Below are positions 781 through 12,692 of a stretch of 64,000 nt of DNA, one piece after another (the first letter of the stretch is position 1; each line of letters opens with the position of its first letter). The notes beneath the pieces are model-generated. The model saw only the letters and a list, made by a program, of their open reading frames with translations. It made no database searches and had not been told where the DNA came from. Source of the DNA: Polymyxa betae A26-41 (taxonomy: Eukaryota; Protista; Endomyxa: Phytomyxea); contig RBZT01000620.1 of NCBI GenBank assembly GCA_003693705.1, positions 5,535-69,534 on the forward strand, given 5' to 3'. A program made the position numbers and the translations under genes.

Positions 781-2546
781 TTATTGATCCATAACAGGCT
801 CTTGTAACCTATTAGATGTGTTTGTATCAATCATAGCGAACATAAATAAATGATCTGATGCATATAGCATATTAAATTCAGGTATCTGGCTATTAACTGA
901 CACGTTACGACCTACAACTTCACAATGTCGTTCGTATAGATCTATTCGTTACGATACATAAGTCCGATCATGATACATATCGATACGATCACGTTACCTT
1001 TAGTAACAAAGATGTAATCGAATCGTCGTTTGGGTCGCCATGATGGAAAGGTAAAGCCAGCCTCCGAGTCCGGGGCGTCCTGATAAAAGTTCTATGGTCA
1101 GTTACAGAAATCATCAACTGAGTAACATGTGCATGTAACATTATAGACCTGATGTGTAGCAGTCCAGACATCAGTCATATTTGGGAAATAATCATCTGCT
1201 CGGATCGAGTTCATATCTCCAGCTAGTATGACGGATTCCCCCTATATAATCCATCATATATATACAGAAATCATTCCACCTATCCGACTGGACGTACCTG
1301 CTCCCAGTGTGCTTCCACAATGTCGCGAATTTCAGGCATTGTTCGAATTCGCGCCTTCTCACTCAGTGATCTACAGAATTTAGAGCATAACAGTCGGCGT
1401 GTCCATGGGGTGATGAGTGGAACCCCATCACCCCATCTTCCCTTACAAATGTGTGTTAAGAACGTGTATGATCTCAGACTTGGCCACAACACCAACATCC
1501 AGTACAATACGTTGATGGAAATCATCTACATCATCCACATCACGGGTTAAATGTGTTACAGATACAGAATCTATAGGATAACGACTAAATGTAGCCAGAC
1601 CCTCCCGTACTACCCTCAGCCGAATTAGTTCCATAGATGGAGTGCTATGTCATGAGGGTTACCGATCTCATCACCATCAGTGAACATCATAGCTGATTCA
1701 TATACATACTGCATATCAGGTAACATAGCGCGTAGATCATCAATCATGAATCTATCAGTATCTTTCGTACTAACAGCACGTGAGCGTACCTGTAACGTAC
1801 CACGTCTAAGTGTAACGTGACATCAAGAAACATCAAGATCAGAAATCTGACCTCTTGAAAGGCGATTATATCGGGGTCATACTGGTCCAGGATCTGTTGT
1901 AATAGTGGAATACGTAAGTTCCAGTGATTATAATTCCATATGTTGGCTGATAATATACGTAGTCCAGTACTACCACGACTATCACAGGTACTACCAGGTA
2001 ACTGAACATGTTTGTAACGTTGTAGATCACCATTATATGAACATCTATAACTGGTGATACTTGACACATTCTGATATGTTGTAATTGTAATCTCATGATC
2101 GAATGTGATCTCGGAGTCTGTAATACGTAATATGAGATCAGCGACTTCACCAATTACCACTATATCATCATATAAGCTACATCATACAATTTCAATGCCA
2201 AACATTGTTCAGTTGACAAACCAATCCTGAAGCATCTCCTCAACAACCAACCAAAATTCGATGTAAAATCGTAATGTTAGATTACTTGGGGGGAACGGTA
2301 TTGTCAAAGTTTGTGTCTGATTAGAGATAACATCTATTAGATGAAGACGATCACGATCTCCTTTAGCCATCTCCAGGATCTTATCCATAGCCAACTGATA
2401 AACACAGCATACGCGGATCAGTACGCATTGGGGGCACCGCTTCGCACCTCGGTTTATACCTGGACAATGGGGCTATCGGCATGGGTCAGTACGCCGGCCA
2501 TTGTTGCGATGAGAATAGCGGCAGCAGAATGAATGAATTTGAGCAT
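781..2546 (-). CDS. Secreted endonuclease/exonuclease/phosphatase (EEP) family protein, multi-exon
   Basis: Signal-peptide-like MLKFIHSAAAILIATMAGVLTHA. EEP motifs occur across exons: LRILSANIWN, PDIIAFQEVR, VILAGDMNS, GFTFPSWRPKRRFDYIF, YASDHLF. Stop TAA at 783-781. Confidence 0.8.
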
Positions 2547-4056: not shown

Positions 4057-7000
4057 ATGTCGAAATCATCATCGATTGCCGACTTACAGATAGGACATTT
4101 ATATTGGATTCCAGATACAGAACAAGGATGGATTAGGGCTAGAATACATCAAATTACTGATCATGATCTTCATCTAAAAGTTGGTGCTGATGACACATCG
4201 CTGACTTTACCAATTGATCAATATCGATCACTAATACCAGCTGGAGCTGATTGTGGTGATCTAGCTGATGTTCAAGATCTTACACAGCTCGATCGGATCT
4301 CTATTGCATCTCTATTGGCGACATTACGGGCTCGATTCTTCACAGATCGTGTTTATACATACGCTGGTCTTACATTGGTCTCTGTAAATCCGTTCAAATC
4401 AATCCCAGAGCAGTATGGTGCGACAAGTATGGCCTCGTTTATTAAAGGTGGTGATAATATGCCACCACATATATATGCAGTAGCACAGAGATGTCGACAG
4501 AATCTCATAGAGACACACCAACCACAATCATTAATCATCTGTGGTGATTCTGGTGCTGGTAAAACAGAGGCTGCCAAATATGCTCTGCAGTATCTGGTGC
4601 TATTATCAGCACATTGTACAGAATCTGATCAGATTAGAGAGGGTATGTCAGGGTCATTATATCGATTTCCTGAGATGAATAATTTGTTAGCTACAAATGA
4701 GATCCAAACAAGGATTATACAATGTAATCCTGTATTAGAAGCATTCGGAAATGCAGAAACCGTTCGAAACGAAAACAGGTTGGAATATTTTCGACGGTTT
4801 CGCCGAAAATCAGTTACGACTAGGGTCTAGGGTTTTGTGCAATTGAACCTTCCCACAGTTCACGATTCGGAAAATACCTGGAGATCAGTGTCGAGAAGCA
4901 GACCGGTGTGATACGATTGGCCAGTATGACGTACTTTATGTTGGAGACGTCAAGAATAACTGGCCATGCTAATGGTGAACGTTGCTTTCATGCATTCTAT
5001 GCGATAGTGGTGGGATTGGATCCGCAACTGCTCCAAGACCAGTTCGGTCTGCAATCGACCAAATCCACCTATAAAATTCTACAACCAGCCAATGGTAGTT
5101 CAGGCAAGCCCTCACCCCATCGACGACGTCCATCGATTCCGTCTTTAAAGGTCTCAAGTTGAAAATGCCACAAATTTTTTTATTTAAATTTCGAAAACAA
5201 GTGCGTCTGCGTTTGTGTCGTCTTTTTAAGATTGGAGTTTTATAAATGTGAACTTGTTGAGTCTTATTTTTTTACTTTTTTCTCATCAATGTATATGTGC
5301 AGGTAGCAAGTGCTGCTGAAGAATGGGCAGGAATTGTGTCTTCCATGAGACAGATCGGTGTGACCGATGACGAAATTCATGCGATCTCATCGGTTCTGGC
5401 CGCCATCCTCCACGTAGGCAATATTCGTTTCGAAACCGATGACCAGAACCATGCTCGAGTTATCGAAGATCATCATTTTGATTGGTTCATTCGCCTCACC
5501 TCATTTGGTAACGATCAATTTTAGAATCTTCGAATATTCCTGAGACGTCCTCTGTTGCTTACAGATCGCAAACGCTGTCTTGAAGCATTTACATGCCGAT
5601 ATCTTGGTCAGAATCCACAACATGTAGTACAGGTACCAATTGATGTTCAAGCTGCTGAATCTGGTCGCAATGCTTTAGCTAAAGAGATGTATGGACGTCT
5701 ATTTCGATGGATCGTTGCCCGCATCAATGTATCACTCCAGAATATTGCTCCCGTTCAATCTGATACTCTCACAACTATCGGCATCCTCGATGTCTTTGTA
5801 TGTTTATCATTTTGACATTTTTGTGAAATTCGATGACTGTATGAATTCGAATTTATTGCTTAAAAGTGTTCTTGGCGACTGTGAATATGTTAATTTGTCT
5901 CGTAAAACCGATTGTTTCTTAGACCTGATGACCTGTAGGGATTCGAAAAATTTGATGATCGTAACGGGTTCGAGCAGATCTGCATCAATTACTGCAATGA
6001 ACGCCTTCAGGCTATGTTTATTGAATCAGTATTGAGTGTTACTGAACAACAAGCATATTCTGTTGAGGGTATTCAATGGAATGCCATTTTGTTGCCGGAT
6101 TGTACACCGACGTTGACGTTAATTGAAACCATCCTCAAACTGCTTGACGACGAATGCTTAATTCCTCAAGGTTCCGCTTCCCATTTATTCACGACAATCT
6201 CACAGGTTTGGAGACATAGTCGGTTCTCTCAGTCTCGGTGAACTTAGTAGTATTCAGATATCCAGCAGTGTTTTCACCGATGATAATCGGCGCTCTCCAT
6301 TACATTTCACCATCTCACATTATGCCGGTCAGGTCCAGTACGATTCGTCTGAGTTTATCACCAAGAACCGTGACCGCATTAGCGACGATATGAATGATCT
6401 GCTTGATACAGCTACATCACTTCTGATCTATGCGGTAAATGTCTTCGATCATAATCCTTCCTGGTTTTGATCGGATATCCATCTTAGATGACATCATCAA
6501 CAACACCTTTCTCAATGTCTACTGAGATGCAAGTAGATGATCCAGTATCTGCTCGTCGTTCAACCACGAAAAAGAGCAGATTTCAAGCTGGACAGTTCCG
6601 AGGTCAAGTTCAGCATCTGATGAGCACCTTGGGTCGTACTACCCCGCATTTCATTCGCTGTATCAAACCGAACCAGGCCCAGCGACCCGGGCTGTTCCAG
6701 TTCGGCGCCGTACTGGACCAGCTCGGCAACGCCGGCGTCCTGGAATTGGTCCGCGTCCGACAGACTGGGTTCCCTATTCGATTATCTCATGAACAGTTCC
6801 GTATTCGATATCAGTTCAACGATATCGTTGAGCCTCTGGAAGTGTTTCTCTTAAGGCAGCTCAAAGAAAATCTGTTTGCTGTTGGAAATACGCTCGTCTT
6901 CTTAAAGGATGATGGATATTCCCGTCTTGAAGCGATTCGTAATCAGGTTTTGTTGATTTGCCTTTTTATTCGTTTGAATTGAAACATCTTTAGGCTTTGA

Positions 7001-8379
7001 CCGTCTCGGTAATTTCCTTACAAGCATTGCTTCAAGTAATCCGTGCAAGAATCAGATTCCGAAGATGGCGTTCATCTCTGGCTGCAATACAATCTGCTAT
7101 TGCTACATATGCCGGTGTTCGGTCACATGTCAGCAAGAATATCATTGCAGCTGCAATGCTAACGCTCGTAGCAAATCGTGCTGCTAGAAGTCTGCTTCGA
7201 TCCTGGTCTCAGAAAGCAAAAGATGTCGATCTGAATAAGATCGATGGTATTGATGCACTTTATGTAACCAGTCAAGTTGTAATGTTGACGTTTACGACGA
7301 GTGACGTCACAAGTGCCATGTTAAGGCTGATTTGTCAATTACGAGATGGAGCTCCATTCCGAATCTACAACTTATGCCTTGGTAACATTATTTTATTGGT
7401 ATTTGTTGACTTAGACATCGAGTTCAGATATCGAATACGATAAGAGTGCTCTGCTTCCTGGCGAATTGGCTCATTTCCCATCATCAGGCCATACGCCATG
7501 TCCGTTTGCAATGCTCTGCGAATTCTGCCTATCGATCTCGGAATGGATCTCAAAACCGGATTCGATCGCCATCGTTCACAGTAAGGGTGGTCGAGGTCGA
7601 TGCAGGTAATCGAACGTTACGCGATTTGAGAGAGAATAATTTATTCATGCCTGGTTGCAGCCTAATGATAGGCGCTTATCTATTGCATCAGCGTATCTCA
7701 GTAAGCCAAGCTGATGCTATGTCTCGTGTAGCATCGCTATGTTCCGATCAGGATCCAGATAGACATCTTGCGCCATCTCAACGTCGCTACCTCGAATATT
7801 GTACTGTTTCAATTACGAACACATTGACTGGTTCTGATTGACGTTGACTTGATAGATCATCGTTATGTGATCGCTAGCCCACCAACCCAGCTGAATGTGA
7901 CTGTCAACTTAACCCATGCAACTCTGGATAATGTGGACTCAAGCTATATGGGTCCGGATATGGAGATCTGGTTAATGATAGCTACTCAGCAGGTTTGTCA
8001 AGACACTGCTGGTCATGATTCTCGATTTGAATGAGCTCATGTTCAGGACGATGGGAAAATGCGGCAGAAATGGATTCGATCTGTGTCCAGGACGGCAACG
8101 TCGTGTTCGTGGAAGCTGCGGAAACCTTGCTTGCTTTCAGGAGATGTAAAAATTGAAGTCCTTTCTCGTGAGAAACGCGGCAAAGTCGCCAAAGTTCTCA
8201 TGTACGTCTGTACCCATTCAGCCTTCGTCCAGCCCCGATCGGTTTTCACCAAAACGGTATTGCTGAAGGATGTTGTTGGTATTTGCCTTTTCTCATCAGC
8301 TTTTTAGGAGCTCGATAAAGTATATCGCGATGCTGATAAATTTCAATTTGTAAGGTTCTCTATCGATTTTGAGACCTGA
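4057..8379 (+). CDS. Unconventional myosin (SH3-like N-terminus, motor, IQ) with a C-terminal PTEN-like pseudophosphatase and tensin-type C2 domain
   Basis: Motor motifs: VSVNPFK, P-loop GDSGAGKT, LEAFGNAETVRNENSSRFG, DVFGFE, HFIRCIKPN. IQ-like segments follow intron 6947-6993. Tail spliced through intron 7382-7427 and an intron starting at 7606 reads FRIYNLCLDIEYDK...IAIVHSKGGRGRCSLMIGAYLLH...PSQRRYLEY, then C2-like GDVKIEV...TKTELDKVYRD. Stop TGA 8377-8379. Confidence 0.88.
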
Positions 8380-10975
8380 TCTTATAATGAAAGCTCATAA
8401 AATAATAGCAGAGTTAACTGCAGATTATATGCTCAGATTTACTTGTCTCCGTGCAGCATAGATATCAATTGTTTCTTCATTCTATTCTTTTCGCCCGTAA
8501 CAGATTTACTGTGTCGAAGCGTGGCAATACGTTTAGACGTTGAGTTAAAGATGTTCGCCTTTCTCTCCAACTGGAATACTTTGAATTCCATGCCAGATTA
8601 TCGAACAAACATTTGCAGACAATAATCTATCACCACAATTATTTTGTAAAACCAGCATAATCTTCGGGTCTTGGTTCTAAGAGCATACCAAGATATCAAG
8701 TCGTCCGTCCACAACAAACTCGATAAATTCTCTGGTATCTTCCACCATAACGGATTATGGATCAGAAAATTCTAAACTTCCAGCGTCAGATTTTTCCAAT
8801 AGGACTTAGGAGCTACGAGATGGCTTCATCGACGAAATCGTTAAGTAATGCATTACTGTTATCAGATGAATATCCAAAAGAATAGATAGGTAATCGTATT
8901 CGTAAAGATGCTTCAGTGTGTGACGAACATAACGTGCGAATCATCTACAACTTCTCAGTTATCAACTCACATTTGGCATCATGATCTCAGCTCTGAGCCG
9001 GTTGCGACTGGGGTTCGAGATCTGTGTAAACTGGTTGAGAACGCTCTTTACCCTCAAAACGCTACTGTACGGCTATGTAGGCAGGCCAGACACCAACCAA
9101 GTATTGCTTTCAGGAGGATATAGTTTTTGGACTGGAAAACTGATTCTCAAATCGCAGGACATCAATGCTAATGAAAAAGACACACAAGCGCAGGTTGAAG
9201 GCGAAGTCGAAACCGCGACTTTTGAGGACCAAGTCGAACTGGAATTAGATAACGACGATGAGCAATTCTTGCTGGAAGGAGCATCACAGGTCCAGTTTGA
9301 CTGGAATTGTTTGAAAACGCCAGTGCCCGAGAGGATTCCGGCCAATGATGTTATTGGTGAGCCAGCATCATGACAGATTAACCATTATGCCAATAAACTG
9401 GAAGATTACAATAAAAACTCTGTGTTTTACTATATAACGCCAATATCTGAGAGGAGTTGCTCAACTGATGACTTGATAGATTTAAATAAAAACGCTTAGT
9501 GGCTTATCACAATCAGCAAGCAAGAAATGAGAAGCGAGAACAGCGTCGCGGGTCGGTTCCAGTTTCTCATCGAAATGATGAGAAAACACCGATTTGAAGG
9601 ACAAAGCTGCATCCTAAGCGACGCGTTAAGTCATGTAAACTGTAAAAACGGGTAACCAGAAAGAGAACAAATAAGAGTTAAATAATACGACCAACAATTG
9701 CAGAGAGATTCTTGACCACGCTCACATAAACCCAAGCTGGGATCATCGACGAATAGCATGAAGTGAAAACTGCAGCAGCAAGACCGGTAATGAAATTCGG
9801 AATAGGCAATCTAGGGCATCTTGAGATGGGACAATTATCTTGTGCAGTGATGTGATATAAATCAAAGCCTTCGTCTTCATTCCTGTTCTCACTGAAGAAT
9901 TTACAATTCGGCATTGAAGACAGTATCAGCATTCTGAGGGAAAATCAACAAAGCATCTATTTCTGATTGTTAAACACACCTCTCAAACTCAATACCCTGT
10001 ATAAGGCGTTCAGCAACAGCAGCCAGGTCGCCATCGTCGACAAGCTCGTCGTCAGGGCAAAATGCGACCAAATCGTCTTCTCTTTCCACTATTTGAATGT
10101 GGATATCTTTCTGTTTACAGCTATCACACTCGACGGAAACAAACGTCGAAGCACCAGCTGATGCCACCCTGCCGATGGCCAGAAGAAAATTACGACAGCG
10201 ACGCTTCGCGACCGAATCGATGCGAATCTGTATGAAACCATGAGACAAGCGAACAGGATGCAGATATCCAGGTACATTATAGTGATGGTTGATTGACAGC
10301 TTGGAAAGTGTCAGATCGTCATTCCGACACCGGCTACAAGGATCCAAGTTCAAATCCATTAACTTTGAATATTACACCGTGGGAGGCAGTCTCAAACAGG
10401 TTGTATAATGTCGGGGTGCTTATTACAGTAACTAACAACAGTAAATCATCCAACCAAAGCTGAATCTCGACTTCATTTAAAACATATGGTAAATGGAAGC
10501 CAAACATAGACAAAATTGATTGGGTCACAATAGTGTGTCATCATTAGCTCTGCTGATTATAATTAGCAGCTAGGCTCCACCAAATGGCGTTAGAGCTAAT
10601 TGCTATCCAAAGAAACTATTTCTGTTCGAGTCAATTAGCTTCTAGTTGAAGCAAATTTTGCACTCATAGGATCTGATACCTAACGTCATTTATTATTTGA
10701 TTTCACGAACGATAGTCTTAACCATCAAGAAGATCTAATCTGGTGATGTCTGTCAATTTACTTTAGAAATCACGAACAAAATGATATGTTGAAGCCGCCA
10801 GCCGAAGAGTTATAAATCCTGGAAATGGGTTGGCCCATGACAGTTGAAATCGCAATCGTTAAAGGAAGGTGAAGACCGAGTTGGCGCAGCCCATCATCCA
10901 TCACTGCATATATACTGCCTTTGTCTTGATTTTGCTCTTCAATATTTGTCGTCGTCGGTATTATTGCCAGTCACG

Positions 10976-11564
10976 ATGTCCAATCCCGAAGCGTATGTCG
11001 TTCCCAGAAATTTCAAGCTGCTGGAGGAGCTCGAGGCCGGCGAAAAAGGTATCTCTTCCGGTAAACATGCTGGCTGGGTGTCATATGGGCTTGATGGTAT
11101 GTCGAATAACATCTGTTTATGTCATGATTCAACATTAGATTTATAGGCGACGATATACTCCTAACAAACGTAAGACTTGCATTCGTCAGTCCAATTATTG
11201 AAGGTTTCCTTAAGTGTGACTAACAGTGGAATGCGACGATTATTGGTCCACAGAATACCAATCTCGGTGAACGTATTTATTCTTTAAAGATTATCGCTGG
11301 ATCTAGATATCCCAATGAGCCTCCTACGGTGACGTTTGTCACCAAAATCAACATGTCTCACGTTGATGGCACCGGTTTAGTATTACCGAGTTTTCCATCC
11401 ATCCATAACTGGAAACCATCCAGCTCTATGGTCGATGTACTCTGTGCCTTACGGGAAGCCATGGTCTCCGCCAGGTAAACCTTCCGATCCTTGTTACTCA
11501 ATCGTGACTCTAAAACAATTTATGCAGCAAATTGCCACAGCCACCAATTGATTCTACCTATTAG
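10976..11564 (+). CDS. MMS2: Ubiquitin-conjugating enzyme E2 variant (UEV1/MMS2)
   Basis: [18 protein letters not shown]...VSYGL...[11 protein letters not shown]...RIYSLKI...[16 protein letters not shown]...KLPQPP; three short GT-AG introns. Confidence 0.92.
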
Positions 11565-11871
11565 ATATGTGGACTTTTTAAATAATAAACTTCATATTGT
11601 CATTGGCAGTTAATTTTGACTTTGCATTTCAATTATAGAAGTTTGGTTGGCGCCCTTTGCAGGAAAGCTTTACGGAGGCAGCAGCCACCCGTAGTTCGGC
11701 GATTTGCTGATAGGTATCGTAACGTAAGAGAGTAGAGAGACGCTGCTGCCTGCGTTATTGTTGCAAAGAACAGTTTGTCACAGGGTCGGAGGCAGTGAAC
11801 TCTGCAACTGCTCTACCTGGGAGATTTCATCCTGGATCCTGCAGATTAGAAAGTCGGCGTCATTCGTCAGC

Positions 11872-12554
11872 ATGGTGGCCTTTGTTGAGGATCTCGTATC
11901 CAAAGTAACCAACATCGAATGGACGCGCCTGAATCAGTTAAGAGCGGCGTGGGGTGTCACAATTACCATGACGACAGCTCTAGTCATTTCGGCAATTGTA
12001 TGCATCTTTATTATGCTGGTTTTCATGGTTTTAGCTCTAGACTTTCGTTCATGGCTGTCTGATCCCATCTGAAATTTTATTTCAGGTTGCGGCTGCTGAA
12101 GTACCCACGAAAACGCTGCAGTTTTCGCTGATCTGGTATATCCTGACGGTCGTTGTTTGGGCTACATTTTCTTTCATCGTACTACTGGTCAATGTGCCTT
12201 GGATTCAGATCGACCCGTCGATCGGCTTTGGAGCTCTAGTTGCATCATCTGCGTTTCTACTTACAGTTGAAGTTGACCATTGTGTATTCTGGGCTTCGCT
12301 CAATGGGATTGTACGTTTGCTTGTCGATCTCTTTTGTATTTGTGCATTTCTATGCACTGCTTTTTCATTGCAAGTTCGTCTGTATGATGTCATTGAGCTT
12401 ATTTTGTTTAAAGAGCTCAGTTACGAGCGTAGCAGTATTCAGTGCCCTGACAGCCACTAGCTTGCTTGTCACCCTGGTAGGTTTCCTTCAATTCAAAGAT
12501 GACCTTATTGGCGATACGGTAAAATCAGTGAAGTTATTAGTATTTAAGAACTAA
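11872..12554 (+). CDS. Uncharacterised multi-pass membrane protein
   Basis: Spliced ORFs 11758-12072, 12194-12460 and 12240-12554 give about five hydrophobic helices with plausible GT-AG introns; no family recognised. Confidence 0.5.
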
Positions 12555-12692
12555 ACTTTTGACAGAGTACCATGGAAGCTCCAAATGTCATGGCCGTTTC
12601 CTCGCAGAAACACATTAAACCAAAAGATTATTATGGCAATCATAACGCTGAGCAAGCGTAGACTTAAAGCATCAAATACATCTAACATATGT

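What the first reader, a model, noticed from the sequence alone, without database searches (positions are those of the whole stretch)
4057..8379. Myosin motor fused to a complete PTEN-like phosphatase + C2 tail
The ORF track splits this locus, but canonical introns (6947-6993, 7382-7427, one from 7606) join motor, IQ region and tail in frame. The tail follows PTEN in order: FRIYNLCLDIEYD (PTEN YKIYNLCAERHY), IVHSKGGRGRCSLMIGAYLLH ([20 protein letters not shown]), PSQRRYLEY (PSQRRYVYY), then a tensin-type C2 (GDVKIEV...TKTELDK; PTEN GDIKVEF...TKNDLDK). PTEN-like modules are established in tensin, auxilin/GAK, TPTE/VSP and plant class II formins. I do not know them as a standard myosin tail. Inference: a lineage-specific myosin that couples actin motility directly to phosphoinositide membranes.
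Basis: partly seen in the sequence, partly recalled or inferred. Interest (0 to 1): 0.9.

Follow-up and report, generated by a model that had tools for sequence, protein, structure and literature searches.

The report
Myosin with a dead PTEN tail
A sugar-beet root parasite (Polymyxa betae) and the clubroot pathogen share a myosin motor whose tail is a PTEN-shaped but probably inactive lipid-binding module, an arrangement not found in the myosin surveys searched, which probably hooks membranes onto actin.

Summary
The fusion is real. Thirteen exons joined by twelve GT-AG introns give one stop-free 1159-aa protein: SH3-like N-terminus, intact myosin motor, two to three degenerate IQ-like repeats, a PTEN-fold phosphatase-like domain and a PTEN-type C2. 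The genome matches Polymyxa betae by size. Plasmodiophora brassicae has a collinear ortholog (44% identity, four shared intron positions) in which one exon spans motor end, neck and PTEN start. Best reading: a single-headed myosin anchored to anionic or phosphoinositide membranes, as with auxilin and class II formin PTEN modules. Unidentified protists carry myosin-RGS-(C2)-PTEN-C2 proteins, one with an intact catalytic site. Their motors group with the plasmodiophorid pair, but the AU test does not reject alternatives. No paper searched describes a myosin-PTEN fusion; new tails are common among protist myosins. The scan noted this same stretch once before, on the same DNA only.

The parts
4057..8379 (+). 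Whole gene, 13 coding exons, 1159 aa: myosin with PTEN-like pseudophosphatase-C2 tail
   Evidence: ortholog alignment
4057..4778 (+). Exon 1: N-terminal SH3-like domain (aa 15-55) and motor start with P-loop GDSGAGKT (4543-4566)
   Evidence: (Myosin_head E 9e-44; Myosin_N E 9e-5, below cut-off)
4859..5150 (+). Exon 2: motor; switch I (NSSRFGK) spans the exon 1/2 junction
5303..5507 (+). Exon 3: motor; following intron position shared with P. brassicae
5565..5797 (+). Exon 4: motor (TEDS-site position is His); switch II spans the next intron, position shared with P. brassicae
5939..6205 (+). Exon 5: motor, relay helix
6258..6434 (+). Exon 6: motor
   Evidence: (C12:11798-11968 hit)
6488..6946 (+). 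Exon 7: motor end, SH1 helix with the group signature QLxNAGV, converter
6947..6993 (+). 47-nt GT-AG intron joining motor to neck; absent in P. brassicae, where the junction lies inside one exon
6994..7381 (+). Exon 8: degenerate IQ-like repeats at 23-aa spacing (aa 794, 817; about 6994-7218) and start of the PTEN-like domain (about 7234 on)
   Evidence: no Pfam IQ hit
7428..7605 (+). Exon 9: PTEN-like core; WPD-loop Asp replaced by Gly936 (7490-7492); P-loop HSKGGRGR (7577-7600) with Ser966 for the catalytic Cys
7661..7800 (+). Exon 10: PTEN-like domain end (PSQRRY motif); following intron position shared with P. brassicae
7856..7992 (+). Exon 11: first part of C2
8047..8256 (+). Exon 12: C2 core with basic CBR3-position loop REKRGKVAK (8167-8193); best conserved part of the protein
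   Evidence: (PTEN_C2 27.8 bits)
8308..8379 (+). Exon 13: end of C2 and stop codon

Best explanation
A single-copy unconventional myosin of plasmodiophorids. An ATP-driven actin motor and a short light-chain neck carry a PTEN-fold pseudophosphatase plus C2 that works as a membrane-binding and phosphoinositide-reading tail. The motor is probably single-headed (no long coiled coil between neck and tail), so it would act like class I myosins: tethering or pulling a membrane against actin, or moving vesicles in teams, rather than walking processively alone. Shown: gene structure, orthology, fold of the ortholog's tail, loss of catalytic residues, conserved basic C2. Inferred: motor activity, monomeric state, lipid binding and its specificity, cellular role.
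For: Stop-free 13-exon frame. P. brassicae SPQ99898.1 aligns at 44% over 1207 columns with Pfam Myosin_head, weak DSPc and PTEN_C2; one P. brassicae exon (aa 715-946) runs from the SH1 helix into the PTEN start. P-loop, switch I, switch II, relay and SH1 motifs are present. AlphaFold model of the P. brassicae tail: pLDDT 89.5, pTM 0.90; best Foldseek match PTEN 1d5r, TM 0.80, then Ci-VSP and auxilin. Cys->Ser and Asp->Gly in both species, whereas most other PTEN domains surveyed keep HCKAGKGRT. C2 core 65% identical, motor 52%, phosphatase-like 38%; the C2 core stretch has net charge +10/+8. Three intact PTEN genes exist elsewhere in the genome. Precedent: inactive PTEN modules target moss class II formin to PI(3,5)P2 (PMC3410418) and auxilin/GAK to phosphoinositides (PMC7054993); Cys->Ser MTM1 keeps lipid binding (PMC3410418).
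Against: No transcript evidence for P. betae. Two of three P. brassicae annotations split or truncate the gene (CEP03938.1; XXQ36819.1), though CEP03938.1 reads through an intron whose position is shared with P. betae. IQ motifs are degenerate and get no Pfam hit. The TEDS position is His, so regulation is atypical. The fold model used a PTEN-rich alignment, which biases it towards PTEN. No lipid-binding data.
Confidence: 0.72

Rival explanations
1. The tail is a protein-interaction (cargo adaptor or scaffold) module, as in tensins, and lipid binding is minor.
For: The active-site pocket is eroded at two catalytic positions and the phosphatase-like part is only 38% conserved; PTEN's N-terminal PIP2-binding motif is not conserved between the two species.
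Against: The most conserved and strongly basic part is the C2 core including the CBR3-position loop, the membrane face in PTEN (established knowledge); P-loop Arg and Lys are kept.
Confidence: 0.18
2. The tail is an active lipid phosphatase carried along actin (literal reading of the first title).
For: Complete PTEN fold; catalytic Arg retained; a related myosin (P0181/P0283) keeps HCKAGKGRT and the WPD Asp.
Against: Nucleophilic Cys is Ser and the general acid Asp is Gly in both plasmodiophorids; Cys->Ser inactivates this enzyme class (PMC3410418).
Confidence: 0.03
3. Two adjacent genes (a tailless myosin and a tensin/auxilin-like protein) or a decaying locus joined only by the model.
For: Some P. 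brassicae annotations split the locus; no reads checked.
Against: Only 47 nt separate motor and neck in P. betae; the junction is inside one exon in P. brassicae; no frameshift or stop in 1159 codons; four conserved intron positions.
Confidence: 0.03
4. The motor is inactive and the protein is an actin-membrane tether.
For: Divergent motor (long branch; best non-ortholog identity about 33%); His at the TEDS position.
Against: All nucleotide-site motifs and the switch I Arg / switch II Glu pair are present in both species; motor 52% conserved.
Confidence: 0.04

Closest known systems
Plasmodiophora brassicae SPQ99898.1 / UniRef A0A3P3YI76 (PBRA_003545 locus), 'Myosin motor domain-containing protein'
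   Same: Ortholog: same architecture, 44% identity, same Cys->Ser and Asp->Gly, four shared intron positions.
   Different: Automatic annotation only, no paper found. It has a third IQ-like repeat and a roughly 60-aa low-complexity extension; its last ~260 aa look like a mis-joined neighbour gene.
PTEN / TPTE / Ci-VSP
   Same: Phosphatase-C2 fold in the same order (TM 0.80).
   Different: Catalytic Cys and Asp absent; fused to a myosin.
Plant class II formins, auxilin/GAK, tensin (inactive PTEN-like modules)
   Same: Eroded PTEN module attached to a cytoskeletal or trafficking effector; independent fusion followed by loss of catalysis is documented for formins (PMC2386819).
   Different: Effector here is a motor; inactivation is by Cys->Ser with the Arg kept, whereas moss formins lose the Arg (PMC3410418).
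Class I myosins (TH1 tail)
   Same: Works like: short neck, compact membrane-binding tail, probably one head (own knowledge, inference).
   Different: No TH1 domain; has an SH3-like N-terminus; His at the TEDS position.
MyTH4(-FERM) myosins (class IV and allies)
   Same: Most motors near it in the trees carry MyTH4 tails.
   Different: No MyTH4 or FERM; deep branches weakly supported.
Choanoflagellate myosin III-like proteins with Y_phosphatase (PF00102)
   Same: Myosin fused to a Cys-phosphatase-superfamily domain (PMC3942036).
   Different: Classical tyrosine phosphatase without C2, different lineage.

Membership tests
Myosin superfamily | Myosin_head domain covering the profile in order | tested here: met
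   Exons 1-7 hit PF00063 in order; ortholog covers 2-679 at 603 bits.
Myosin superfamily | P-loop, switch I, switch II, relay, SH1 motifs | tested here: met
Myosin superfamily | IQ light-chain neck | tested here: inconclusive
   Degenerate repeats at 23-aa spacing in both species; no PF00612 hit.
Myosin superfamily | Actin-activated ATPase and motility | not testable with these tools
   needs biochemistry
PTEN-like module (PTEN, tensin, auxilin, formin II) | Phosphatase fold followed by PTEN-type C2 | tested here: met
   PF10409 over cut-off; PDB sequence hit; Foldseek TM 0.80 for the ortholog's tail.
Active PTEN phosphatases | HCxxGxxR with catalytic Cys | tested here: not met
   HSKGGRGR / HSKAGKGR.
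Active PTEN phosphatases | WPD-loop general acid Asp (D92) | tested here: not met
   Gly in both species.
PTEN-like module | Phosphoinositide binding | not testable with these tools
   Basic C2 conserved; binding not measured.
Class I myosin | TH1 tail | tested here: not met
   No PF06017 hit in the ortholog or the exons scanned.
Class IV / MyTH4 myosins | MyTH4 tail | tested here: not met
   No PF00784 hit.
Rhizarian classes XXXV-XXXVII (10.1101/064030) and the 79 classes of PMC5583752 | Motor groups with the class reference sequences | not testable with these tools
   Reference sequences and figures not available; text and domain key name no PTEN or tensin domain.
Proposed myosin-PTEN group (with P0181/P0283, P0276) | Motor monophyly | tested here: inconclusive
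   Clade recovered in all trees (FastTree 0.87-0.99; IQ-TREE 86/72); best of 62 placements, but several alternatives pass the AU test.

The most novel reading that the evidence does not exclude
An unnamed myosin class of single origin, defined by a QLxNAGV motor and a PTEN-C2 tail, spread across several protist lineages. Some members carry a catalytically intact PTEN plus RGS and C2, making a motor that delivers a lipid 3-phosphatase along actin under G-protein control. Plasmodiophorids kept a shortened, catalytically dead version as a membrane anchor.
Probability: 0.5. Interest if true: 0.72.

Novelty: new variant of a known kind. Interest (0 to 1): 0.58.

Why it matters
Myosin tails set what a motor moves. 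A PTEN-C2 tail would be another solution to membrane coupling beside TH1, FYVE, PX and MyTH4-FERM, and a further case of the pattern seen in formins and auxilins: fuse PTEN, lose catalysis, keep lipid binding. It is conserved in two crop-relevant obligate parasites whose cell biology is poorly known, and gives a concrete protein for studying their actin-membrane work (plasmodium growth, cleavage, host entry; which of these is unknown). The relatives with an intact site suggest a motorised lipid phosphatase may exist. The surprise is moderate: PMC5583752 counts 287 orphan myosins representing about 160 further types, so new protist tails are expected.

Tried and rejected
rRNA search of the genome gave only a weak piece, so species identity rests on assembly size and the P. 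brassicae ortholog. A short-query homolog search found nothing. Two metagenome scans gave no further member: none, and 80 other myosins with no PTEN within the DNA held (positive controls worked). ESM Atlas feature search was blank. The source organisms of P0181/P0283, P0276 and P0237 could not be identified. One tree script returned no answer and was redone. (bacterial promoter scan) does not apply to a eukaryote and was ignored. Rejected: active phosphatase, two genes, class I or class IV membership, and the 1506-aa length of SPQ99898.1 as a real longer tail.

Full report
Source. The window lies on contig C12 of a 27,085,814-bp, 1001-contig eukaryotic assembly. The published Polymyxa betae draft has 1,001 contigs and 27,085,946 bp (PMC6328671). 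With the closest relative of the gene coming from Plasmodiophora brassicae, I take the genome to be P. betae, a plasmodiophorid (Rhizaria). This is a match by size and kinship, not by rRNA (one search was uninformative).

Observation. Three-frame translation and a hand-built model give 13 coding exons from ATG 4057 to TGA 8379, separated by twelve GT-AG introns of 46-152 nt. The frame is 1159 aa with no internal stop. Eight introns are not multiples of three and the other four hold in-frame stops. Exon by exon, Pfam finds Myosin_head pieces in profile order, a weak Myosin_N, and PTEN_C2 just over the cut-off on exon 12; exon 9 matches human PTEN chains best.

One gene or two. The best hit to exon 1 among 1.84 billion representatives belongs to a P. 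brassicae cluster. Its member SPQ99898.1 has Myosin_head, weak DSPc and PTEN_C2 and aligns with the model from residue 15 to 1150 at 44% identity. In P. brassicae a single exon (aa 715-946) runs from the SH1 helix through converter and neck into the PTEN domain, so the junction needs no splicing there. Four intron positions are shared between the species (after aa 406, 484, 914, 1020). Other P. brassicae annotations truncate or split the gene, one by reading through the shared intron after NLCL. The fusion is therefore well supported without transcripts.

Motor and neck. Purine-binding, P-loop (GDSGAGKT), switch I, switch II, relay and SH1 motifs are intact in both species. The TEDS position is His in both, which is atypical. 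The neck has degenerate IQ-like repeats at 23-residue spacing (two clear in P. betae, three in P. brassicae) with no Pfam IQ hit, and the tail follows within about 30 residues, leaving no room for a dimerising coiled coil. A single-headed motor is inferred.

Tail. AlphaFold on the P. brassicae tail gave pLDDT 89.5 and pTM 0.90; Foldseek ranks PTEN first (TM 0.80), then Ci-VSP and auxilin, and the Atlas neighbours are PTEN, TPTE and tensin clusters. The alignment used was PTEN-rich, so this confirms compatibility rather than discovering the fold. Both plasmodiophorids have Ser for the catalytic Cys and Gly for the WPD-loop Asp, while keeping the P-loop Arg; most other PTEN domains surveyed keep HCKAGKGRT. 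Conservation between the two species is 65% in the C2 core, 52% in the motor, 38% in the phosphatase-like part and 29% in the neck, and the C2 core stretch is strongly basic (+10, +8), including the loop at PTEN's CBR3 position. P. betae has three intact PTEN genes elsewhere, and none of its other myosin loci has a PTEN_C2 hit.

Mechanism. Most likely the motor pulls on actin while the pseudophosphatase-C2 unit holds an anionic or phosphoinositide-rich membrane, the basic C2 giving affinity and the dead pocket possibly giving head-group specificity. Precedents: the inactive PTEN domain of moss class II formin binds PI(3,5)P2 and can be replaced by a Cys->Ser MTM1 (PMC3410418); the inactive PTEN-like domains of auxilin and GAK read phosphoinositides and time recruitment (PMC7054993). 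Functionally this resembles a class I myosin with a different lipid anchor. Gene structure, orthology and residue loss are shown; motility, monomeric state, lipid binding and cell role are inferred. Confidence 0.72; main rival is a protein-binding tail (0.18).

Wider distribution. Tail searches found further fusions in unidentified eukaryotes: P0181/P0283 (myosin-IQ-RGS-C2-PTEN-C2, catalytic site intact), P0276 (myosin-RGS-PTEN-C2, Cys kept, WPD Asp lost, intein-like insert in the P-loop) and probably P0237 (converter-IQ fragment, MyTH4, intact PTEN). P0181 and P0276 were found through their tails, yet their motors group with the plasmodiophorid pair in every tree: FastTree 0.984, 0.87-0.99 in six variants with up to 125 motors, IQ-TREE 86/72. 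They share QLxNAGV in the SH1 region, seen in one other motor in the motif surveys (the pattern did not read every motor). This placement is the best of 62 tested (bp-RELL 0.70) but several alternatives, mostly among MyTH4-type myosins, are not rejected by the AU test. In the PTEN tree their domains lie close together with Paulinella proteins, which hints at Rhizaria, but branches are long. P0237's PTEN lies elsewhere, suggesting a separate fusion. The reference motors were a similarity-selected, largely unnamed sample, so no class assignment is made. Two metagenome scans added no member.

Novelty. The two large myosin surveys (PMC3942036, PMC5583752) contain no mention of PTEN or tensin in text or in the domain key, the rhizarian myosin survey names none, and keyword and accession searches found no description. 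Figures could not be read, P. brassicae myosins were annotated qualitatively in PMC5583752, and most subscription papers are not searched, so prior cataloguing as an orphan is possible. The parts are all known and PTEN is a promiscuous module in protists (PMC2386819).

Verdict. A real, conserved, apparently undescribed myosin architecture: new variant of a known kind, interest 0.58. If the motors form one class that includes enzymatically active members (probability about 0.5), interest would be about 0.72.

Noticed in passing
L032:5317-7010 (ENA ERZ27284698; protein P0276): The myosin-RGS-PTEN gene carries a Hint/Hom_end intein-like insert (PF05203, E 1e-12) directly after the P-loop GESGAGK, ending in HN before the motor resumes. 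An intein in a eukaryotic myosin P-loop is not something I know of.
   Followed up: partly
L030:1474-7863 and L031:10001-16513 (P0181, P0283): Myosin-IQ-RGS-C2-PTEN-C2 with intact HCKAGKGRT and WPD Asp in one open frame, from an unidentified eukaryote: a candidate motorised lipid phosphatase.
   Followed up: partly
L125:2-4132 (JGI 3300042198; P0237): Contig starts in a myosin converter-IQ-like stretch and continues to MyTH4 and an intact PTEN-C2; probably another myosin-PTEN fusion. Its PTEN domain branches far from the others, suggesting an independent fusion.
   Followed up: partly
L126:2481-6002 (P0200): RGS-C2-PTEN-C2 protein with no motor upstream, 32% identical to the tail of P0181, with an eroded P-loop: a possible source cassette or a motor-less derivative.
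   Followed up: partly
L033:53-3937 (P0198): C2-PTEN-C2 followed by a Myosin_TH1 domain with no motor in the called gene.
   Followed up: no
G000 C846, C839, C462 (L127, L128, L130): Three PTEN genes with intact HCKAGKGRT in this genome, plus further PTEN-like hits on C721 and C686; about ten myosin loci in all.
   Followed up: partly
window about 9750-12630, 34500-35810, 45400-45880: Genes homologous to neighbours of the P. brassicae ortholog (including a ubiquitin-conjugating enzyme and an EF-Tu/EF1A-family GTPase): partial synteny with rearrangement.
   Followed up: no
window 1744-2160 (-): Exon with a weak endonuclease/exonuclease/phosphatase hit (PF03372, E 3e-4), part of the upstream gene.
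   Followed up: no
window 38001-40000: Strong GC skew (+0.36) against a flat background.
   Followed up: no
L035:3001-9603: P. brassicae annotations of this locus disagree: a fused model with a probably mis-joined 3' neighbour, an intron read-through, and a split model.
   Followed up: yes
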